Assembly (NCBI RefSeq): GCF_000143415.4 | Contig: NW_003314268.1 | Span: 3,418,559 to 3,482,558 of the forward strand | Reading direction: 5' to 3' | Length of the DNA stretch: 64,000 nt | Source of the DNA: Selaginella moellendorffii | Taxonomy: Eukaryota > Plantae > Lycopodiophyta | Part shown: piece after piece, positions 37,561 through 48,057 of the stretch | How positions within the stretch are numbered: position 1 is the first letter of the stretch | How the letters are laid out: each line of letters starts with the position of its first letter | The notes under the pieces: generated by a model | What the model saw: the letters and a program-made list of their open reading frames with translations, nothing else | Told to the model about the DNA's origin: nothing | Databases searched by the model: none | Translations under genes and position numbers: made by a program

Positions 37561-39942
37561 ATGAGGCACAGAATTCTATAAGGATTTATAAGTGATATTG
37601 TAATGGTGGTGATAAATTTTGTGACATGTATAACTTTGTCATGACTTTCAAAAACTTAAGTGCTATTTTGTGAGAGTGGAGGTGTCAATGCATGGAGCTG
37701 GATGAAATTGGTAGTGAGGCCTTTGCTGCTAAGATATGTAAGAAAAGTTTATAATTTAAAAAAAAAGATTAATCTAAATACATTCTACTTTAGATAATAA
37801 AATATGCTAGAATTTACCTAAAGGTGTTTAAGAATGTTTATAAATTATAAACACTAGATGTAGCTATATTACCAGCAAACCAAAAAGAATTTTTTTTGCT
37901 TTACAAATTAATCTTTTTTAAAAGATTAGTTATATCAATTAAATTAAGGTTGAAACCCTTAACATGGATATGGATCATCTTAACCTTTTAATTCCACTAG
38001 AGGCTTCTAACTGTAAGCTTACCATTCACTAAATCTTTTAGCAAGAATCTCTATCAATCAAAAGTTAAAGATTTTGGAATTTCTTTTAGCAAAGAATCCT
38101 ATTGCTAGAAGTATATTCAAGCCATAAGACACTCAGCCATCCTATAAAGAATGTGGAACATTCCAAAAGTTGGTTAATGTGTTTTTGTGGTGAGCATGTA
38201 TTTGGACAGTAGGATGTATAATTAGAATCATAATTTGTTGCAACTGGTTTTTACACACTCTTGATGAATGTCTTTTTATTGAGTATAGTTTTTTTTTTTT
38301 CTGTGTAGCATTGGAGAAAGCTTGATTTGGCATTCATTTAGAATTTGAATTTAAAAGCACAACAATTAATAGAAATTCTTTAGAAGATTAACATGTCTTA
38401 AGGGAAATGATTATTCCAATCTTAAGTGGGATATACTTGAATATTCTAGGTATATTCTTTACCTATAGGTTTTCTTAACAGATAAACAACAAATGTATCT
38501 CTTTTCTTGTTTGATTTTACTCCAAACTTTTCTTACCATGATTGCAAGCATATCTTATTTCCTCGTTATTTCTTTCTTAGTGGGAGATTGCATTCACTCG
38601 CTTCCAGAATCATTTCAACCCGGACTCAGTTCCTTGTCTCATATGTGGAGCTTCATAGAGCACCAACATGAGCGTGTGCAACTGACTGAATATGTTCATT
38701 GCCACTTTGTTTTTCAGTGTTTGCTAAGTTTTTCTTTATAGATTGATGCTCCCTTTCTCTCCAAGAATTTTTTTCTTCTCTCAGCTGCTAGCTTGTCCAC
38801 TCGACAACTTCTGGCTCGTCTCAGCGAACCAATACAAATACAATTAGTTTATACAAGAGCTTTCAACAATTAAGAACTGACGTAGAGCAAGTCAAAAGGA
38901 TCGAACCGACGACGCCACCACGCTCCATGACCCATGACTCATTTAAGTTGGTTCTTTGCTTTGTTTTCTCATGGCCCACATACAGCTCAACTGTCATGTC
39001 TTATCATGGGTCATGCTACATTGCCCAATTTTGCGCCAAATCTCATTTTCACACTTGGTTCAAATTTCACGTCGCCGGTACCGGTAAAGGGTAAACGTAC
39101 GCTTTTTGAAATTTACCTTTAATTTAAACACCCTCGACCGGACATTGGGGTTAATCGTGAAAGAAGAGAGGGAAGAACAGGGTTTTAGCGAGAGTAGTCG
39201 CGGGTGAGTCATCGATCGATCGTAGGCGCTAGCTCCATCCGCGTCGTGGCACGCCTGGCGCCGCGACGGCCGCGTCCGATCTTCGGGTTTAATCCGTGTT
39301 CTTGGCCGGGGAATCCACTGTTCTTAGTGCTGATTGCGTAGTTTTCTTCCGGGAAATCTCGATTCTAGCGGCTGGTGAGGTGCTTTTGCGGCGGCATTGC
39401 CGAAATATTACAGTAGTCGCAGGGGGCCAAAAGTTTTTCTCCTCGTCCTTTCTGGCAGAGGCATCTTTTCTTTGACGAGAGGAGATTTTAAATGCTTCTA
39501 CTGCGGTGTTTTCTCGATCTCCTCGGTCAGTGACACAAATCCAGGTGAGAAATTTTCTCCCCATATTTAAATTCTTTACTGGTAGAGCATAAAAGATTGC
39601 TCCCTTGCGTTGCTTGTGTTGGGCGCAGGCGATCGGACCATATGTTTCTGCCCCATCCCTTTTTCCTTTCCTTTAATTCGTCGGTGCCGAAGCTACATTG
39701 TGATTGATTGAAGGGCGACACACCGTTATTGGGTGGATGAATTCTTCTCATCACTAGGCGTACTGCTTCCACAAGGTACATTTTTCTTTTTCGTTTTTCC
39801 CAGTACGATTCCTCACCGTCAGAATCTGATTGCGTGGATATCTCTGCTGTGCCAGTTGCAGCTAGGAAAGCAAAGCTAGGAAATTGCCTCACGGTCCATT
39901 GTCCATATGTGAGAAGGGGCGCCCGAACGACGCGTTTCCTCA

Positions 39943-42900
39943 ATGGACTCGTCGAGAATGGAGCAGTATGAGATCATTGGGCAAGTTGGGAAGGGCGCGT
40001 TTGGCTCAGCCATTCTCGTCAATCACAAACTTGAGAAGAAGAAGTAAGGCGCATTGTGTTTTGATGTTCCTTGTTCCTTCTCATGTTTTTTTTTTCCTTT
40101 TTTCTTTTTATCGTTTCCGCTTGTCATAGGTATGTCTTGAAGAAAATAAGACTTGCTCGCCAGAGTGATAGATGCAGGCGTTCTGCTCACCAAGAGGTAC
40201 TTCGAGCAATTTGAGGAGAAAATTTCGCATAACGTGTTTTTGGTTTCTAGATGGCTCTTGTTTCTCGGGTGAAGCACCCTCACATTGTCGAATACAAGGA
40301 AGCGTGGGTGGAGAAGGTTTGGTATTCTTGTTTTATGCGTAGTTTTGTTCTTATACAAGTCTGCAGGGATGCTATGTATGCATCGTCACAGGATACTGTG
40401 AGGGAGGGGACATGTACGCATTTGTTTTGTTCATAACAAACACTTCGAGTTCTTATGATTCGCCTCTTGTATGTTTCGCAGGGCGGACATCATCCGTAAA
40501 GCGAACGGAACTTACTTCCCAGAGGAGGTCAGCGGATTGTTTTCATTGTTTCTGGTTTTAATGTTTCTGCTGTTTGTCACAGAGGCTTTGCAGATGGTTC
40601 GTCCAACTCCTCTTGGGCGTTGAGTACCTACATGCAAACCACATTCTCCATCGGGATGTTAAGGTAGACGTGTTTGTCAGTGCTCCCGTGATATGCTCAA
40701 CAGCTGTTCTCCATTTCAGTGCTCCAACATATTTTTAACGAAGGATCATGACATTCGATTAGGTACGCCAAGTGATTGGAGCATTCGTTGTGTTTCTCAC
40801 TAAAATGTGGAAAACTTGGTAGGTGACTTTGGACTCGCCAAAATGCTCAAGTCGGATGACCTTGCGTGCTCGGTAAATACCATCCTGTGGTCGTATTTCT
40901 TCTGCTTAAAGCTGTTATACAGGTCGTAGGGACACCGAACTACATGTGTCCTGAGCTTTTAGCTGATATCCCATATGGTTTCAAGTCAGATATCTGGTCT
41001 CTAGGTAAAAGTAAATAATGGTTCTGAGTTGGTTCTAATTTTAAGCGTTACGTGTGCAGGATGTTGCATGTATGAGATGAGCGCACATAGGCCAGCATTT
41101 AAAGCTTTCGTGAGTTTTCTTACTTCCTGCTCTGCAGAAACCGTTTTTCATGTTTTGTCTGACCAGGACATCCAAGGACTGATCAATAAAATCAACAAGT
41201 CTTCGATCGGCCCACTGCCAACGTGCTACTCTAGCTCATTGTGAGTGCAGCATTGAGTGTCTTCTCCTGTTCTGCTCGTTTGCTAACTTTTTGCTTCGAC
41301 TGCACTGTGTTCTCTAGTAAATCCTTGATACGGAGTATGCTTCGAAAAAATCCGGAGCATCGTCCGACGGTAATCTGTTCGACTTGTACCTTTGTCGCTA
41401 ACCTGACCTGGTTGAAACATTTTGTAGGCCGCAGAACTACTGAGACACCCTCATTTGCAACCGTATCTACTCCAGCGTAGAAGGCAAGTTGGTGGAGCTC
41501 TTCTCATGGCGCACAGCCTGGACCTTAGTGGCGATAGCAGCTATTCAATGAACGCCACGGACTCTAGTGGCGACGTCGACAATAAACGATTTGAGCACGA
41601 CGACGTGCAATCAGCTGCTCCCACTAGCAGAACTGCAAGTCACATTTGGAATGTCGATACGAGTGAGAAGGAGAATTCCGAGACGTCATCAGAGTCTCTA
41701 TCAAAGACACTGGGAAGAAACGCAGGTCTAACGAATTTTGAGTGGCTGAAGCATCGACTCGCTAAAAGGCACTTCGAAGAAAACTTGACGGACGGGAGTG
41801 AAACGCAAGTGGATTCTGGTGCTGAACAAGACAAGTATCCAATCAAAAGCTCGCCGGTTCGAACTAGCCGTGTAAAGTCGGTAGTCCCAAGTCCTCGGAC
41901 GCCGTTAGCAAGGGAAGCTCCTCCACGAAAGAAGTATTCTGTAAGTGTTCGTGCTTACAATTCTGAATGGTTCTAAACTTTTCAAGCGTCTGCAGGGTGG
42001 GGAGCCTCCTTCAAGATATAAAATCAAAGCAGAGCTGGTGTCTCCGCTTGTGGTGGAACGATCAACTGGAGCTAAGTCTAAGCCGACCGTCCCCACAACA
42101 CCACTTTCAACTGCACGAAGGTCCTCGATGCCCGCAGCTGGTGGTGGCAAGTATACTTCCCGGAATGCCGTGCCGGCGGTACACGAGACACCAAAGCCTT
42201 ACACACCAACAACTAACCCGGCTGGACGAGTTTCTCGGCCAGAGGATCCAGCCTTCGTTCGCACCACGGTGAAGTCATCTCTACAGTCGCGGATACATCC
42301 GAGCCCAGTCAAGTCTCTCGGACGGGACCAGGAGTTTAAAGACGACGTGCTATCGCTGCTGCGGCCTCTGGTCCGGCCGTCCAACAAGAAGTCGGCGCAC
42401 CTGGCCGGATTGAAGGACCTCCGATCACCAGACGTCTCAGTGAACGCTCCCAGGCTGGACAAGATCCCGCAGTTCAACTTGACGCCTGACGAGTCGCTGT
42501 GCGAGGCCCACGACTTTGCAAAGTACGCGGACAGGTACTTCTCCAAGAGCAGGCTGCCAGAGCCGCGCAGCAGCCACGCAAAGTCTGGCGACTTCCACAC
42601 AAGTGGCGATCGCTATCACGGGAGCGGTGGTGGATCCAAGGACAAGATAGCCATCCAGATAAGCAACGAGAAAGTCCAGATGCCAGGCAGCTCGGGCCCG
42701 GTCTTCAACGACGTGGTTCATGTCATCCGGCACAGCACGTTTAGGCTCGGCGGTGGCGGCGACAAGGCCGAGCCGCAGCAACACCACCCGACGCACAGCG
42801 ACCTTCCGCGGGACATGGACATCGCGTCGCTGCTCGATCTCAAGCCCGACGTGGAGGTGCTTCCAATCTCCCAGCAGCAGCAGCAAAGCCAGCAACAATG

Positions 42901-43240
42901 TCAACACCAAGGTGGCGGTTGTGGTGGTGGTCCTTCGAGTTTGAGTGCTACTGCGACAGCAACAGAGGTAGCGTCCGGGAGCGAGCAGCAGGACAGGGGT
43001 GCGATGGATGGGACGGACTTGAAGTCTTACAGACAAAGGGCGGATGCTCTGGAAGGCTTGCTGGAGCTTTCGGCCCAGCTGCTAGCGCAGCACAGGCTGG
43101 AGGAGCTGGCCATCGTCCTCAAGCCTTTTGGTGGCGGTGCGGTGTCGCCCAGGGAGACGGCGATCTGGCTCACCAAGAGCCTCAAGGGGATGCTGGCCGA
43201 GCACCACCAGGAGCAGCACAAGGTCACGGCAGCAGCGTAG
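39943..43240 (+). CDS. NEK: NIMA-related kinase (NEK5/NEK6-like), multi-exon
   Basis: [61 protein letters not shown]; plant NEK C-terminal [14 protein letters not shown]...[10 protein letters not shown]. Confidence 0.95.
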
Positions 43241-44399
43241 CCACAGAACTCTTGTTTGGAACACTCCCAACTCCAAAGTATATGACCACGCGGCCCAGGG
43301 ATCAGGTGAGCCAATTTTTTTTTCTTACGCACGGGATTGCCGGTCTCTGTGGCGATCACATAATAAAAGAAATGCATCCTTGTGTTTTGTGTATTGGCAA
43401 GAAGAAAATCGCATTTGCCTTTACTGGATGAGTGTTTATAGCTTTGTATTTGTAGTAAATCAAAATAACAATGCTAATCTAAATTAGATACATAGTTTAT
43501 AACGATCATGTTTGGTTTACTTAATATCAAATGGAAGTTTATAATTACAATAGTGTTTAAATTAGAATACACTAAAAAGTGTTTAGGAAAGTTTATAAAT
43601 TATAAACACAAAATTAATTTAAATAACTGTTAAATGGTAAAATATCCCAGAATATTTAACATATTTTTTCATATTAAAATCTGGAAAGCCGAATTGATTT
43701 ACACAAAAATTCTGGAGTTTTAAAACAAATGTTTGGAAATTATAATCAAGAAAAACAAAAAGGCCATATTCTAATATATACTGAAAATCCAATCTTCGCT
43801 GCATATCTCCAAATATATATAATACGAACCGACCCACTACCCCGAGTACACCCCGCTCGAGACAAGCTCGTGCCTGGTGTACGCATCTCTTGCCCCAGTT
43901 ACTAACTCCCACATTCTCAGGGATGTTTGTCCAATTGCACCGTATCAATGACCCTTTCTCTTGTACCTCATAATCTATCTCCTCGTATCTCAACTTCCAG
44001 CGCGACCACAAGATCATCGCCATAACTCTGTGATTCATCGCAAATCATGTCTTCTCCCTCCCCAAAGTATGTCCTGCTCGAGAGAACTCGTGCCCGATGC
44101 GTCACACACCACATCCTTGGCATGGACTCGTTCCACGCCTCCAATCATGCGCGCAGTACATAAGCGATGGCGCTCTTTATTGCCGAAACAAACTTGTGCT
44201 CTCTCCATATCTCTTCTCGGCCTCGCGTCCTTTTCCGCGATTCCTCTAGCACCAGGCGAAAAAACGCCACCTCCTACGAGTGTAGTTCTCAGTTGAGTAA
44301 CGAGTTTGCTTTGCTTGCTTGCTTTCCAGGAACAAGCACACGCGTAGCTCCTTTCTTTGAAAGCTCGCATTCCTGAAAGAAAAAGAAAATCAAGGAAGC

Positions 44400-46208
44400 A
44401 TGGAAGTTAGCAAGTTCCAGACCGAGGCCAAGAACGCGGTACTAGCACGCTTGCTCGCCTGCCTCGTCAATGAGAAGTTCGTGAAAGCGTACCTGGTGCT
44501 CCACGCCGAATCTCTCCCAGCCAGGCTCGCGGCTCCCGTCCCTCCCAAGCACCGCAAGCACTGGATGTGCATCTCCGCCGCCTCCGAAGCGTTCGAGCTA
44601 CTCAAGCACGGTAGCTTTCTCGTGCCACTTCGAGAGCTTCCCCCGGTCCAAAAGCCTCCACAGCTCGGCGGCGAGCCCGCGGAGATTCTTCCAGTAACTT
44701 TGCTCGACCCGGACGAGATTGGCTTCCCCGTCCAGCAGCTGCAAGTCGATCGACCTGTCGAGTACGTGCCCGCAGACGTCCGGACCGTCACCACGCAGCT
44801 CCAAGAATGGAACCCGGCCTTGAGCGCTGCGCTGGTGGAGCAGATCACTCAAGAGATGGAGAACTCGGTGTCACACCAGGCGGCCGCTTACAGCCACCAC
44901 CAGGGACGAGCTCCGCCAGAACTCGAGCACACCACCGATTCGACGCAGTGGGAGCAGCTCATTGTTGAAGGCCACGCAACCCATCCCATGCACAAGTCGA
45001 GGTTTCACGTCCCTCCAACTTTGCCCATCGATCCCTGGAACAACGACCTATCGGCCCCCAAGATCCATTTCTTCGCGGTTCCACGATCCAAGCTCACTGT
45101 CCGTGGCGACTTTGAGAAGCTTGTAGCGCCTCTCGTCCAGATCTCCTCCACCAGGGCCAACGTTTTCATGGATTCCTGCGACGAGCTCGTCATGCCTGTC
45201 CACCACGTCCAAGTCCCGAGCGTGCTGCTCCACTTTCCTCACGCTCGCCACCTTCCTTTCACTTGCAAAGCCCGAGCTCAAGCCTCAGTGAGAACAGTGG
45301 TCGTGGACGAGCTCCCCGCCTTCAATCTCAAGCTCCCAATCGGTGTGAAGATCAGCTCGGCCACCCGGACTATCACACCGTGGACGACTCACATCGGCCC
45401 AGCTTTCAAGCCCGTTGCTGACAAGATCATCGAGGACAACGACCTGCTCGAGGTTGCTCACGAGCTCGCCAGCGTTGTTTCCAATCACCCGGATCCCGAC
45501 GTCGCCAAAAACCTGAGCTGCGTGATCCGGCAGGACCCCCAGCACCTGGCCACCACCCGAGCCCGAGGCGAGAGAGTCGTGCTATCTGCCGCTCTCACTG
45601 AGCGATATCCCTCGAGGAGCGATGACTTCGTCGTCAACACCCTGTTCCACCTCGACTCCCTCGAGAAGAAGGAGCTCTTCTTCCAGAACTACGCCCGGCT
45701 CTTCCTCCGGGCATTCCTTCCACCGCTGCTGAAACACGGAGTGAGTTTCGAGGCCCATCTCCAAAACGTTCTGGCACGGTTCCGTCCCGCAGCTGTCGCT
45801 GGAGAGTGGGAGCTCGTGGGTTTCACGGTCCGCGACTTGGGCGGTATCAAAGCCCACCAACAAACTCTGTTCGAGACCACTGGCCTCGAGCTCGACGTGT
45901 GGGATGCGGAGAACTGCTCTCAGCTTGCTGAGACAATCGACGAAGTTCACAACCTGGCCTTTCACACGATCATCCAGTGCCATCTCCATCGTCTCGCACG
46001 GGCGCTGAGCGTCCACTACAACGCCAAAGGTTGGGAGTTTGTGAGAGCCGAGGTGGATGCCATGCTACCGCCCGGATGCCATGCCCGAAGCCTGTGGCTT
46101 GGTGCTACTGTCAACTGGAAGGCGTTTATCACCATGAAGCTCCAAGGCTTGTACCGCGACTACCTTTACATTAAGGTTCCCAATCTCATCACTTACCGGC
46201 CATCTTGA
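44400..46208 (+). CDS. NRPS-independent siderophore (NIS) synthetase, IucA/IucC family; intronless, 602 aa
   Basis: WEQLIVEGHATHPMHKSR, MPVH, AQASVRTV, LKLPIGVKISSATRTI, FEAHLQNVL, RDLGG; AATAAA at ~46260. Confidence 0.9.
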   Translation: MEVSKFQTEAKNAVLARLLACLVNEKFVKAYLVLHAESLPARLAAPVPPKHRKHWMCISAASEAFELLKHGSFLVPLRELPPVQKPPQLGGEPAEILPVTLLDPDEIGFPVQQLQVDRPVEYVPADVRTVTTQLQEWNPALSAALVEQITQEMENSVSHQAAAYSHHQGRAPPELEHTTDSTQWEQLIVEGHATHPMHKSRFHVPPTLPIDPWNNDLSAPKIHFFAVPRSKLTVRGDFEKLVAPLVQISSTRANVFMDSCDELVMPVHHVQVPSVLLHFPHARHLPFTCKARAQASVRTVVVDELPAFNLKLPIGVKISSATRTITPWTTHIGPAFKPVADKIIEDNDLLEVAHELASVVSNHPDPDVAKNLSCVIRQDPQHLATTRARGERVVLSAALTERYPSRSDDFVVNTLFHLDSLEKKELFFQNYARLFLRAFLPPLLKHGVSFEAHLQNVLARFRPAAVAGEWELVGFTVRDLGGIKAHQQTLFETTGLELDVWDAENCSQLAETIDEVHNLAFHTIIQCHLHRLARALSVHYNAKGWEFVRAEVDAMLPPGCHARSLWLGATVNWKAFITMKLQGLYRDYLYIKVPNLITYRPS

Positions 46209-46604
46209 GTTACCGTCTGTGGATTTGTTATTACCACCTGTGTGTGGAGAACGTGAATCAATAAAACGATTGTAACGATTTTAGAACTGCAAAATTTACC
46301 TCTGCCTGAACGATGCTTTGGTTAAGAGTTACACGTCAACATGGACAACGGACTTTTCCAGAGCTGGACTATTCCATGGCCTGGCAACAGCAAGGTATAT
46401 TAGAGAAGAAGAAAACACTGTTTCTAGAGCTGTAGAAATCACTGCGAAGCATTCCTCGCGGAAACAAAACTTTGGAGCTTCGTTTAAACCGGCCTGATTG
46501 TCATAGCGAAGCCGGAAGAAAGATCAGCATTTCCATGCTCTAAACTTCATTGGAAAACGACGTATTCTTCAACAGCGCCAGGGTAATAATGGGATATCAC
46601 ATTA

Positions 46605-46850
46605 TTAATCGTAATGTATCGGGGCTTTGCCCGCGCTGCCACTCAGATCCTTCACGATAGCTGCGCTTGGCGTGGACACACCTCCAAGACCACCATTGCC
46701 ACTCGCCAAATCTTTCCCAGTCACCGCGGTTGCGGTGGAGACGCAAGTTCTGAAACCACCACCGCGAGTTGCAAGAAGGACCCCACCCCGTCGGCATGCA
46801 TTGCCATAGCGACACTTTCCTCGAGCAAAAAACCTGGAAGAAACGAAAGT
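46605..46850 (-). pseudogene. CCCH zinc-finger fragment
   Basis: RFFARGKCRYGNACR; no complete finger or gene. Confidence 0.4.
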
Positions 46851-47019
46851 CATGAGCTTTGCTGCACAGTGGAAGCTCCGGAAGCAAGTGGCTCCCGACG
46901 CCGCGAAGATGACCACCTCCCTCAGGTCCGACACCTCGATGCTCTTGATGGCACTCTAGGAGAGATCATCTTCTCCCCATCCTCGGCACATCCTCGGCAC
47001 ACCACCTCGATGCTTGGCT

Positions 47020-48057
47020 TTGTGGTGGTGGTGCCGAGGATGTGCTTTCCTGGAACACAATGATCACAGCTTTCTGCCAAGACGGCCAAATCAGCATAGC
47101 AAATTGTTATTTGCCGCATGTCTCTGGAAATTTGATGGTCCAAGAGTTTGCCAAAGTCGGGCAAAATCGATCGCACGAAAGAGTCGTGGCCCGGGCTCAT
47201 TCTTTGCTATGGCGCTGGCGGCCAGACCGAGCAAGCGCTGGCTTTTACAGCGAGCGTGGATCGCTGGACAGCGCTGCACCAATCGTATGCCCGGATCAAA
47301 GGCGGTGTTTGCCGAAGCACAACCATGTTGCCGCAAACTCGATGCTCCAGGGAATTCGCGAGATGGTCTTTTGACTCCATGCCCGACGCTGCCGCGATGC
47401 TCCACAGCGCTGCGATCGCGATGGGGTGAAGAGATGCTTCGACGCCATGCCCACGCACGATCTTGTCTCGTGGGCCGCGCTTCTGCATCTGGACAAGTAA
47501 CGAGTTCGATCGAGCCAGGGACGAACTCGCCAGGATGCCCAATCGGAGCGGCCTCCTCGCGGCGGCCGCGGAGAACGCCATGGCCGAATCGCTCTTCCGG
47601 GAGATCCCGGACAAGGAGGATCCACTCGCGTGCGCCATGATCCCAGAACGGGCGGATCGACCGCGCCTGGGAGGCGTACAACGGCGTTCGCCGACCGGTC
47701 AAGGACGGTCGTGGCGTCGACCGCGGATCGGGCATCCCGCGCTGGAGCATGGAGCTGTCGGGCGTGATCCCCGACCGCGTCGTGATGATCAGTCACGCCG
47801 GGGAGCTGGGTCTATGGGATCAAGAGTTCGTGCGATCACTGGTGCTGCGCGGTGGATCTCCTGGGGCGATCGATCTAGCGGAGCCATTCGTGCCCGGCGG
47901 CGGAGTGTGGGGAGCTTGTGCTCGATCTGGAGCCAGGGAACTCAGGACCAATTCTCGCACTTGCGAGCATCTGGATTGGAATGTAGGCGAACAGGAACTG
48001 GGGAGGAGCTTATACGAGAGAGCTTTCCAAATACAAACTCATGAGCACAAGGTATGA
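47020..48057 (+). pseudogene. Degraded PPR gene
   Basis: Frameshifted motifs SWNTMITAFCQDGQ, FDSMP, FDAMPTHDLVSWA, MELSGVIPDRV...SHAG, VWG...GAC. Confidence 0.75.

What the first reader, a model, noticed from the sequence alone, without database searches (positions are those of the whole stretch)
44400..46208. Intact IucA/IucC siderophore synthetase in a plant nuclear genome: candidate horizontally acquired one-gene siderophore pathway
Seen: an intronless 602-codon ORF with the NIS motifs (EGHATHPMHKSR, ASVRT, KLP, EAHLQN, RDLGG) and a polyA signal, directly downstream of an intron-rich plant NEK gene. Established: NIS synthetases are ATP-dependent citrate-amine ligases of bacteria and some fungi, and known plant iron chelators (nicotianamine/mugineic acids, coumarins) do not use them. 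Rhizoferrin is made by a single NIS enzyme from citrate and putrescine, both abundant in plants. Inference: the termini (RLLACLVNE; FITMKLQGLYRDYLY..PN) look like eukaryotic/fungal-type NIS as I recall them, and no accessory genes are adjacent. This single gene could therefore give the plant a polycarboxylate siderophore. I cannot tell whether this has already been reported.
Basis: partly seen in the sequence, partly recalled or inferred. Interest (0 to 1): 0.9.

Follow-up and report, generated by a model that had tools for sequence, protein, structure and literature searches.

The report
Fungal siderophore synthetase gene in Selaginella
The spikemoss Selaginella moellendorffii carries an intact, expressed, intronless siderophore-synthetase gene of fungal type, shared only with a few ferns, so some non-seed plants may make a microbial-style iron chelator themselves.

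Summary
Window 44400-46208 (+) is an intact 602-codon ORF with IucA_IucC and FhuF domains. Its predicted structure (pLDDT 89) matches every solved NIS synthetase over its full length. It keeps 47 of 47 family-conserved residues, including the ATP/Mg motifs.

The genome is Selaginella moellendorffii. The gene is a real nuclear gene. Both haplotype scaffolds carry it between the same plant genes, downstream of a multi-exon NEK-type kinase. Stranded RNA-seq shows an unspliced sense mRNA (about 44157-46290) from both alleles. It is on in one library and more than 100-fold lower in a sister library.

The other plant homologues found are in Adiantum ferns, plus an unnamed fern-like contig. The plant clade (support 100/99) nests among fungal sequences beside Entomophthoromycotina. 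An AU test rejects placing plants outside the fungi (p = 0.02). Purifying selection (fern-fern dN/dS about 0.2) and host-like GC3 indicate long residence.

Most likely this is a fungus-to-plant transfer of a single-enzyme citrate-amine ligase of the rhizoferrin-synthetase type. The product and any role in iron nutrition are inferred, not shown. I found no prior report. Lycophytes reportedly lack nicotianamine synthase, which makes the iron question worth testing.

The parts
44400..46208 (+). Coding sequence of the NIS (IucA/IucC + FhuF) synthetase. It is 602 aa and intronless. The stop codon is included.
   Evidence: ORF. Pfam PF04183 and PF06276. AF2 model with pLDDT 89. Foldseek matches to AsbB, SbnC, AcsD, AlcC, IucA and DesD at TM about 0.7. 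Consensus residue at 47 of 47 columns conserved at 90% or more.
44157..46290 (+). Transcribed unit (mRNA) with a 5'UTR of about 243 nt and a 3'UTR of about 82 nt. The ends are approximate.
   Evidence: A 2134-nt transcript contig in run X1 spans 44157-46290. Stranded RNA-seq run X20 gives depth 32-79 here and zero in 43379-43969 and 46334-47900. There are no joints. The orientation matches the + strand NEK gene.
46260..46265 (+). AATAAA polyadenylation signal
   Evidence: Read directly from the sequence. It lies about 25 nt before the end of the transcript contig.
44967..44984 (+). Codons 190-195 (EGHATH), the conserved His motif. H195 is invariant in the family and is the probable adenine-stacking histidine.
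   Evidence: Invariant columns. It aligns to GHPYHP of AsbB. The role comes from the DesD structures (PMC9356276). The mapping is by motif and is an inference.
45285..45371 (+). Codons 296-324: S296-x-R298-T299, K311 and R323-T324, the triphosphate-binding motifs.
   Evidence: Invariant or nearly invariant columns. Aligned to AQQSMRT...KVSLNILNTSTLRT of AsbB. DesD equivalents are S275, R277, K291 and R303.
45750..45845 (+). Codons 451-482: E451-A-H453-L-Q455-N456 and R478-D479-L-G-G, the Mg2+/alpha-phosphate site.
   Evidence: Invariant columns. Aligned to ESHGQN and KDF of AsbB. DesD equivalents are H440, E442, N443 and D460.
39943..43240 (+). Context: the upstream multi-exon NEK-type Ser/Thr kinase gene, a plant host gene. 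Its 3'UTR runs to about 43409.
   Evidence: Kinase exons with NEK-like motifs. Nek7 is the best PDB match of one exon. An 838-aa Pkinase gene is called at the same position on the allelic scaffold. It is expressed in all four runs.

Best explanation
This is a functional nuclear gene of Selaginella moellendorffii that encodes an NRPS-independent siderophore (NIS) synthetase of the fungal type, the family that includes the rhizoferrin synthetase Rfs. It most likely entered a vascular-plant lineage by horizontal transfer from an early-diverging fungus close to Entomophthoromycotina. It has since been kept under purifying selection in Selaginella and in a few ferns. The enzyme should bind ATP-Mg2+, adenylate a carboxyl group of citrate, and transfer the citryl group to an amine. 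For rhizoferrin it would do this twice on putrescine. That would give a polycarboxylate metal chelator from two common plant metabolites with no accessory enzyme. Transcription is switched on and off between samples, so the product is made conditionally. Shown here: the intact ORF, the family and fold, the conserved catalytic residues, genomic integration on both haplotypes, biallelic sense transcription, nesting inside the fungal clade, and purifying selection. Inferred: the substrates, the product and the role in iron.
For: Family and fold:
- Pfam hits lie above the gathering scores.
- A profile of 29 homologues hits AsbB at 2.5e-36, and also DfoC, SbnC, IucC, AcsD, AlcC, DesD and IucA, with the ATP motifs aligned.
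- The AF2 model has pLDDT 89 and pTM 0.91. Full-length Foldseek matches have TM about 0.7 and E from 1e-25 to 1e-19.
- The Selaginella protein has the consensus residue at 47 of 47 columns conserved at 90% or more, and at 89 of 90 columns conserved at 80% or more.
- These include the counterparts of the ATP/Mg residues that PMC9356276 describes as conserved in all NIS types.

Host gene:
- The allelic copy SELMODRAFT_417847 is 595/602 identical and sits in the same gene order: Pkinase, NIS, 438-aa gene, NEMP, MARCH6.
- One 9-kb alignment at 96.6% identity spans the NEK-NIS junction.
- GC3 is 0.72, against 0.68 for the last NEK exon.

Expression:
- Run X20 gives 32-79x with sharp edges and no joints.
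- Run X19 gives at most 0.7x, while NEK is 42-58x in the same run.
- All 15 allelic SNPs are present at about 40-63% of reads.

Origin:
- The exhaustive phmmer search gave 131 representatives at E of 1e-30 or better.
- Every one that could be named is fungal or a bacterial endosymbiont of fungi.
- In the careful ML tree the plants are monophyletic (100/99). They are sister to Entomophthoromycotina (92/89), inside a clade with 99/96 support.
- With bacterial outgroups the root falls among basal fungal lineages. The AU test rejects fungi as one clade excluding plants (delta lnL 11.0, p = 0.0196).

Selection:
- Fern-fern dN/dS is 0.20-0.24 at dS of about 1.
- Selaginella-fern dN is 0.40 with dS saturated.
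- Between the two haplotypes pN/pS is 0.28.

Chemistry lead:
- The nearest curated bacterial model is FslA, the rhizoferrin enzyme.
- Fungal NIS enzymes including Rfs group with type A' citrate-amine ligases (PMC10700112).
- One NIS enzyme suffices for rhizoferrin (PMC7857480).
- Rhizoferrin is reported from Mucorales and Entomophthorales (Thieken & Winkelmann 1992, as cited).
Against: - No enzymology or metabolite data exist for any plant copy.
- The plant clade is not in the subclade that holds Mucorales (the order of Rhizopus delemar, source of the only characterised fungal enzyme, Rfs). It sits in a sister subclade. Calcarisporiella has one copy in each subclade, so the two could differ in substrate.
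- The FslA hit is far below its cutoff (49 bits against 1000).
- The bacterial outgroups are very distant (branch lengths 4-7), so the rooting and the AU p of 0.02 are only moderately strong. The group tested was also named after the tree had been seen.
- The very patchy plant distribution needs many losses if the transfer happened once and early.
- No exporter or uptake gene is adjacent.
- The conditions behind the on/off expression are unknown because run metadata are coded.
Confidence: 0.78

Rival explanations
1. There were two or more independent acquisitions. Selaginella and the ferns each obtained the gene separately from closely related, unsampled fungal donors. Alternatively, one plant lineage passed it to the other. 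In either case there was no single transfer before the lycophyte-euphyllophyte split.
For: The plant distribution is extremely patchy. Only S. moellendorffii, two Adiantum species and one fern-like contig appeared in three searches of 5.8 billion proteins, including a core-only search for fragments. Donor-side sampling of Entomophthoromycotina is thin: only 3 named taxa, on long branches.
Against: Plants form one clade with 100/99 support on a stem of about 0.27. Its internal topology, Selaginella sister to ferns, matches the species tree. All plant copies are intronless. Selaginella-fern dS is saturated (above 2.4), so any plant-to-plant event would also be old.
Confidence: 0.3
2. The gene is a genuine transferred NIS ligase, but in plants it makes something other than an iron-acquisition siderophore. 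Candidates are an internal metal or aluminium chelator, a citryl-polyamine storage or defence compound, or a means of withholding iron from pathogens.
For: The plant clade lies in a different fungal subclade from Mucorales, and the products of that subclade have not been characterised. There is no linked exporter or uptake gene. Strong on/off expression fits a stress-specific or tissue-specific role of any kind.
Against: The whole family-conserved residue set is retained: 89 of 90 columns conserved at 80% or more. All characterised type A' relatives make citrate-based siderophores. Rhizoferrin is reported from Entomophthorales.
Confidence: 0.25
3. The gene was inherited vertically from an ancient eukaryotic ancestor and then lost almost everywhere outside fungi and a few non-seed plants.
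For: The basal part of the fungal gene tree is an unresolved polytomy, and the outgroups are distant.
Against: The AU test rejects plants outside the fungal clade (p = 0.0196). Plants nest at least two well-supported nodes inside fungi (92/89 and 99/96). No algal, bryophyte or seed-plant homologue was found.
Confidence: 0.04
4. The gene is an assembly artefact or fungal contaminant that was mis-joined to plant DNA.
For: None beyond its fungal-like phylogenetic affinity.
Against: Two haplotype scaffolds of 3.9 Mb and 1.75 Mb carry it in the same gene order, with a continuous 9-kb alignment across the junction. All 15 haplotype differences are seen at about 50:50 in RNA reads. GC3 is host-like. 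Runs from four separate studies of the same organism hold the sequence. The Adiantum capillus-veneris copy lies on a 150-Mb chromosome.
Confidence: 0.01

Closest known systems
Rfs, the rhizoferrin synthetase of Rhizopus delemar (fungal type A' NIS synthetase; Carroll et al. 2017, as described in PMC10700112 and PMC7857480)
   Same: Both have the IucA_IucC + FhuF architecture and a length of about 600-640 aa. Both belong to the same fungal NIS family: Mucorales representatives score 1e-77 at 36% identity. Both are stand-alone genes with no accessory biosynthetic gene. The ATP/Mg motifs are conserved.
   Different: The host is a vascular plant. The plant clade groups with Entomophthoromycotina, not with the Mucorales subclade. 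The plant gene is intronless, whereas rfs is reported to have 6 exons. No product has been shown.
FslA / LbtA / the Ralstonia pickettii NIS enzyme (bacterial rhizoferrin synthetases, type A')
   Same: FslA is the nearest curated bacterial model. The presumed chemistry, joining citrate to a diamine, is the same. In R. pickettii a single enzyme is sufficient.
   Different: The FslA similarity is weak and partial: 49 bits against a cutoff of 1000, covering aa 303-553 only. Bacterial rhizoferrin is the opposite enantiomer, and in Francisella the pathway needs a decarboxylase.
Structurally solved NIS synthetases (AsbB 3TO3, AcsD 2W02/2X3J, SbnC 7CBB, AlcC 2X0Q, IucA 5JM8, IucC 6CN7, DesD 7TGJ)
   Same: The full-length fold matches (TM 0.64-0.72) and the nucleotide-binding motifs are shared.
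   Different: Sequence identity is only 13-18%. A single-sequence phmmer search finds none of them at E of 1e-3 or better. Their substrates differ.
Fungus-to-plant transfer of nicotianamine synthase (bioRxiv 10.64898/2026.08.27.747422)
   Same: Both are metal-chelator biosynthesis genes proposed to have entered plants from fungi by horizontal transfer, with a patchy distribution across lineages.
   Different: The enzyme family and the chelator differ. NAS is reported in euphyllophytes and some mosses and is absent from lycophytes. This NIS gene is in a lycophyte and a few ferns. The preprint does not mention NIS genes.
Fungal-type NIS genes in Mycoavidus/Glomeribacter (bacterial endosymbionts of Mortierellaceae and Glomeromycota)
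   Same: They are another case of this fungal-type gene sitting outside the fungi. They are 33-35% identical to the Selaginella protein over its full length.
   Different: They branch beside Kickxellomycotina, not beside the plant clade. They are therefore a separate transfer and not the donors.

Membership tests
NIS synthetase superfamily (IucA/IucC) | IucA_IucC domain (PF04183) above the Pfam gathering score | tested here: met
   91.1 bits against a cutoff of 25, covering aa 182-400 and nearly the whole profile (3-238 of 239).
NIS synthetase superfamily (IucA/IucC) | C-terminal FhuF-like domain (PF06276) | tested here: met
   44.2 bits against a cutoff of 25.2, covering aa 426-550.
NIS synthetase superfamily (IucA/IucC) | Full-length fold of solved NIS synthetases | tested here: met
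   AF2 model with pLDDT 89.0 and pTM 0.91. The top 50 Foldseek PDB matches are all NIS synthetases, with TM 0.64-0.72 and E down to 7e-25.
NIS synthetase superfamily (IucA/IucC) | Conserved ATP/Mg2+ residues. In DesD these are H153, S275, R277, K291, R303, R370, H440, E/Q442, N443 and D460, stated to be conserved in all NIS types. | tested here: met
   Counterparts by motif and spacing are H195, S296, R298, K311, R323, R377, H453, Q455, N456 and D479. All of them are conserved in at least 90% of 29 homologues; all but S296 are invariant. They align to the matching AsbB motifs. Residue roles come from PMC9356276. The residue-by-residue mapping to DesD is an inference.
NIS synthetase superfamily (IucA/IucC) | ATP-dependent carboxylate-amine (or alcohol) condensation activity | not testable with these tools
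   This needs a recombinant enzyme assay.
Fungal Rfs-type (type A') NIS synthetases | Phylogenetic placement inside the fungal NIS clade | tested here: met
   Trees. The AU test rejects exclusion from the fungi at p = 0.0196. The subclade is the one with Entomophthoromycotina, not the one with Mucorales.
Fungal Rfs-type (type A') NIS synthetases | Stand-alone gene with no linked accessory biosynthetic genes | tested here: met
   The neighbours are a NEK-type kinase, a 438-aa protein with no Pfam hit, NEMP and a MARCH6-type RING protein.
Fungal Rfs-type (type A') NIS synthetases | Product is rhizoferrin, made from citrate and putrescine | not testable with these tools
   This is inferred only from family relations.
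FslA equivalog (NCBIfam NF041038) | Score above the curated cutoff | tested here: not met
   49.2 bits against a cutoff of 1000, and only a partial match. The protein is not a member of the bacterial FslA family. FslA is merely the nearest curated bacterial model.
Horizontally acquired plant nuclear gene | Physical integration among host genes | tested here: met
   Both haplotype scaffolds show the same gene order, and there is a 9-kb collinear alignment across the junction.
Horizontally acquired plant nuclear gene | Recipient sequences nest within the donor group, and the recipient distribution is patchy | tested here: met
   for the nesting. Only Selaginella, Adiantum and one fern-like contig were found.
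Horizontally acquired plant nuclear gene | Expression and selective maintenance in the recipient | tested here: met
   Biallelic sense mRNA. dN/dS of 0.20-0.28.

The most novel reading that the evidence does not exclude
Selaginella and some ferns make a rhizoferrin-like polycarboxylate with this single fungal-derived enzyme and use it as their own inducible iron chelator. In lycophytes it would fill the role that nicotianamine plays in other vascular plants, since nicotianamine synthase is reported absent from them. This would be a third, siderophore-based iron strategy encoded by a plant itself. If the transfer preceded the lycophyte-fern split, it dates from the early period of plant-fungus association on land.
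Probability: 0.3. Interest if true: 0.9.

Novelty: new member of a known kind. Interest (0 to 1): 0.72.

Why it matters
Plant iron nutrition is usually described as reduction-based uptake, coumarins, and nicotianamine or mugineic-acid chelation. No plant-encoded NIS siderophore pathway turned up in my literature searches. Here a complete one-enzyme pathway of fungal type sits in a vascular-plant genome. It is transcribed from both alleles, is switched on and off between samples, and has been kept by selection over a long period. That makes a concrete question testable with ordinary methods: do lycophytes and some ferns, and lycophytes reportedly lack nicotianamine synthase, make their own rhizoferrin-like siderophore? 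It also adds a clean, well-supported case of fungus-to-plant gene transfer. The donor lineage (Entomophthoromycotina-like) is not the one usually discussed for early land-plant symbioses. If active, the gene would be a single-gene module for engineering chelator production in plants.

Tried and rejected
- A single-sequence phmmer search against the PDB found nothing at E of 1e-3 or better. A 29-sequence profile was needed.
- The search for related loci with the broad alignment A2 failed because it had no conserved 7-10-column stretch. With the plant alignment it returned only four Mycoavidus MAG loci, which are fungal-type genes and not an outgroup.
- The tail of the exhaustive hit list gave no bacterial outgroup either. 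Those proteins hit only FslA, and weakly.
- Outgroups finally came from a tblastn search of plasmids (Rhizobium, Sinorhizobium, Ensifer). They are very distant, with branch lengths of 4-7.
- I could not name the organism behind the fern-like Logan contig (SRR17638753). No paper mentions the run.
- I could not decode the conditions of RNA runs X19 and X20 because run ids and names are coded.
- The annotated intron in the Adiantum capillus-veneris model was rejected. The locus is one uninterrupted ORF (L002:9965-12121) that covers the whole homologue, and the annotated C-terminus is spurious.
- The 1-kb haplotype-specific stretch downstream (about 46987-47982) has no Pfam hit, no clear terminal repeats and almost no RNA coverage.
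- Ten literature searches found no paper linking IucA/IucC or NIS genes to Selaginella, Adiantum or land plants. Large HGT screens in subscription journals or in supplements could not be checked.
Full report
**Observation**

Window 44400..46208 (+) is an uninterrupted 602-codon ORF. Pfam gives IucA_IucC (91 bits, aa 182-400, nearly the whole profile) and FhuF (44 bits, aa 426-550), both above their gathering scores. The nearest curated bacterial model in NCBIfam is FslA, the rhizoferrin enzyme of Francisella. That match is only 49 bits against a cutoff of 1000, so the protein is not a member of that bacterial family. AATAAA lies at 46260-46265.

**Whose genome**

An exact-sequence look-up shows a 602-aa cluster mate, EFJ20816.1 / SELMODRAFT_417847, of Selaginella moellendorffii. 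It is 595/602 identical to the window protein. It lies on a different scaffold, GL377601.1, in the same gene order: an 838-aa protein kinase upstream, then the NIS gene, then a 438-aa gene, NEMP and a MARCH6-type RING gene. This is the second haplotype of the assembly. Window 38000-46986 aligns to it in one 9-kb block at 96.6% identity that runs straight across the kinase-NIS junction. An earlier first-stage note, s1-385077, flags the same gene on that other piece. The upstream kinase is split into many small exons whose translations carry motifs I recognise as plant-NEK-like. One exon's best PDB matches are Nek7, narrowly ahead of PAK4. 'NEK' is therefore likely but only lightly tested.

**Is it a real enzyme of this family?**

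- A single-sequence search of PDB sequences finds nothing. A profile of 29 plant and fungal homologues hits AsbB (2.5e-36), DfoC, SbnC, IucC, AcsD, AlcC, DesD and IucA.
- In the printed AsbB alignment the motifs line up: GHxxHP, AQxSxRT, K...S.LRT, CIxRE, E.H.QN and (R/K)D.
- AlphaFold2 with that alignment gives pLDDT 89.0 and pTM 0.91.
- The 50 best Foldseek matches in the PDB are all NIS synthetases, aligned over the full length at TM 0.64-0.72.
- The DesD structural paper lists S275, R277, K291, R303, R370, H440, E442, N443 and D460, plus H153 stacking on adenine, as conserved in all NIS types (PMC9356276).
- By motif and spacing, the Selaginella counterparts are S296, R298, K311, R323, R377, H453, Q455, N456, D479 and H195. 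All are invariant in the 29-sequence alignment except S296, which is conserved in at least 90%.
- Overall the Selaginella protein carries the consensus residue at 47 of 47 columns conserved at 90% or more, and at 89 of 90 columns conserved at 80% or more.

I see no sign of decay or of loss of catalytic residues.

**Is it expressed?**

I laid reads on window 42000-47900.

- In the stranded RNA-seq run X20, depth is 32-79 across about 44167-46333. It is exactly zero in the intergenic bins 43379-43969 and 46334-47900.
- All reads have the same mate orientation as those of the + strand NEK gene, and there are no splice joints.
- A 2134-nt transcript contig in run X1 spans 44157-46290. That implies a 5'UTR of about 243 nt and an end about 25 nt after AATAAA.
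- In the sister run X19, from the same study, the NIS gene has at most 0.7x while NEK has 42-58x. NEK is 44-82x in X20. The NIS gene is therefore switched by more than 100-fold between samples.
- In contig-based runs, NIS depth relative to NEK also varies, from about 0.7 in X1 to about 0.06 in X3.
- All 15 nucleotide differences between the two haplotype CDSs appear in X20 reads at roughly 40-63%. Both alleles are transcribed, and the reads come from the plant itself.

**Relatives**

- A search of 5.8 billion proteins found two Adiantum ferns (45-48% identity), one unnamed Logan contig (P0002), and then Basidiobolus, Dimargaris, Massospora, Dispira, Coemansia, Kickxella and other early-diverging fungi at 37-42%.
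- An exhaustive phmmer scan of 1.84 billion representatives found 638 hits, 131 of them at E of 1e-30 or better.
- The 20 representatives I looked up span Entomophthoromycotina, Calcarisporiella, Mortierellomycotina, Kickxellomycotina, Mucorales, Basidiomycota, Ascomycota, Chytridiomycota and Blastocladiomycota. There was also one 'Glomeribacter' MAG. Six of the 20 had no name.
- Searching again with a plant-only alignment, and then with only the conserved core to catch fragments, added no plant beyond extra partial copies in Adiantum nelumboides.
- The Adiantum capillus-veneris gene lies on a 150-Mb chromosome. It is one open frame that covers the whole homologue, so its annotated intron and C-terminus are spurious. 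All plant copies are therefore intronless.
- P0002 is 61.6% identical to the A. capillus-veneris ORF and branches with Adiantum, so it is probably another fern.

**Phylogeny**

- A 97-sequence quick tree gives the same picture as the careful trees below.
- In a 45-sequence careful tree (LG+C20, UFboot/SH-aLRT), plants are monophyletic (100/98) and Selaginella is sister to the ferns.
- The plant clade sits in a well-supported clade (98/99) with Neoconidiobolus, Massospora + Entomophthora, a second Calcarisporiella paralogue and one unnamed sequence.
- The rest of the tree broadly follows fungal taxonomy.
- I took three rhizobial NIS genes from plasmids as outgroups. They are distant, with branch lengths of 4-7.
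- With them, the careful tree roots in the basal fungal polytomy. Plants are sister to Entomophthoromycotina (92/89) inside a 99/96 clade.
- The best tree that holds all fungal sequences together with plants outside is 11.0 log-likelihood units worse, and the AU test rejects it (p = 0.0196).
- Two caveats apply: the outgroup is distant, and I named the tested group after seeing the tree.

Together with the taxonomic breadth in fungi and the near-absence in plants, this supports transfer from a fungus to a plant.

**Age and selection**

- Between the two fern copies, dN/dS is 0.20-0.24 at dS of about 1.
- Between Selaginella and the ferns, dN is 0.40 and dS is saturated.
- The two Selaginella alleles differ by 8 synonymous and 7 non-synonymous changes, giving pN/pS of 0.28.
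- GC3 of the gene (0.72) resembles that of the neighbouring NEK exon (0.68), while the window as a whole is 45% GC.

The gene has been resident and constrained for a long time. The data do not decide whether there was one transfer before the lycophyte-euphyllophyte split followed by many losses, or later and repeated events. Plant monophyly and the species-tree-like topology favour a single entry. The patchiness argues for caution.

**Mechanism**

Shown: the enzyme has the NIS fold and a complete nucleotide/Mg2+ site.

From established knowledge:
- NIS synthetases adenylate a carboxylate and transfer it to an amine or alcohol.
- The characterised type A' relatives of the fungal enzymes (Rfs, FslA, LbtA, SfaB/D) all use citrate (PMC10700112).
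- One enzyme is enough to make rhizoferrin from citrate and putrescine (PMC7857480).
- Rhizoferrin is reported from Mucorales and Entomophthorales (Thieken & Winkelmann 1992, as cited).

Inferred: the plant enzyme makes rhizoferrin or a close citryl-diamine conditionally, for metal chelation. The main reservation is that the plant clade lies in the Entomophthoromycotina-type subclade, not the Mucorales one, and Calcarisporiella keeps one copy of each.

**Context and novelty**

- Ten full-text searches found no paper connecting NIS or IucA/IucC genes with Selaginella, Adiantum or land plants. Two NIS papers read in detail do not mention plant copies.
- The protein exists in public databases only with automatic annotation.
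- A 2026 preprint reports that nicotianamine synthase itself came to plants from fungi. It also reports that NAS is absent from lycophytes, which nevertheless have YSL transporters, and it speculates about 'alternative siderophores'. This gene is an obvious candidate source of one, but that link is my inference.
- The enzyme kind and fungus-to-plant transfer are both known. What is new is the host kingdom for this pathway and its intact, regulated state.

**Limits**

- Run and organism names are coded.
- The one fern-like contig is unnamed.
- Large HGT catalogues in supplements or subscription journals could not be searched.
- Nothing had to be referred.

Noticed in passing
L004-L007 (Mycoavidus cysteinexigens MAGs); P0032/P0169 ('Glomeribacter sp.' MAG): Bacterial endosymbionts of Mortierellaceae and Glomeromycota fungi carry a full-length fungal-type NIS gene, 33-35% identical to the Selaginella protein. 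It branches beside Kickxellomycotina sequences. This looks like a separate transfer from a fungus to its endosymbiont.
   Followed up: partly
P0185 (Adineta vaga, 379 aa, on an 18-Mb contig): A bdelloid rotifer protein with an IucA_IucC domain matches the plant core profile at 1.8e-28 and 34% identity. It may be another transfer of this family, this time into an animal known for foreign genes.
   Followed up: no
window 46987-47982: About 1 kb of GC-rich sequence lies 700 bp downstream of the NIS poly(A) site. It is present in this haplotype but missing from the allelic scaffold, where the L001 alignment jumps from 12587 to 12583. It has no Pfam hit and no clear terminal repeats, and RNA coverage is almost nil.
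   Followed up: partly
L002:9965-12121 (Adiantum capillus-veneris CM043963.1); P0003, P0016, P0087 (A. nelumboides): The annotated A. capillus-veneris model (672 aa with an intron) is wrong at its 3' end, because the locus is one uninterrupted ORF. A. nelumboides has at least three loci, one full-length and two partial models.
   Followed up: partly
P0015 and P0024 (Calcarisporiella thermophila): This fungus has two divergent paralogues. One falls in the Mucoromycota/Basidiomycota-type subclade and one in the Entomophthoromycotina/plant subclade. This hints at an old duplication, with possibly different products.
   Followed up: no
window 43266: A one-base deletion polymorphism in the NEK 3'UTR is seen in about half of the RNA reads (14/26 and 9/23). 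It is consistent with the second haplotype.
   Followed up: no
same genome, other pieces (notes s1-346889, s1-420295, s1-363803 and others): The scan's notebook lists 159 unchecked first-reader notes that match the words 'fungal horizontal' for this genome. If even some hold up, the NIS gene is part of a wider set of fungal-type genes in Selaginella.
   Followed up: no
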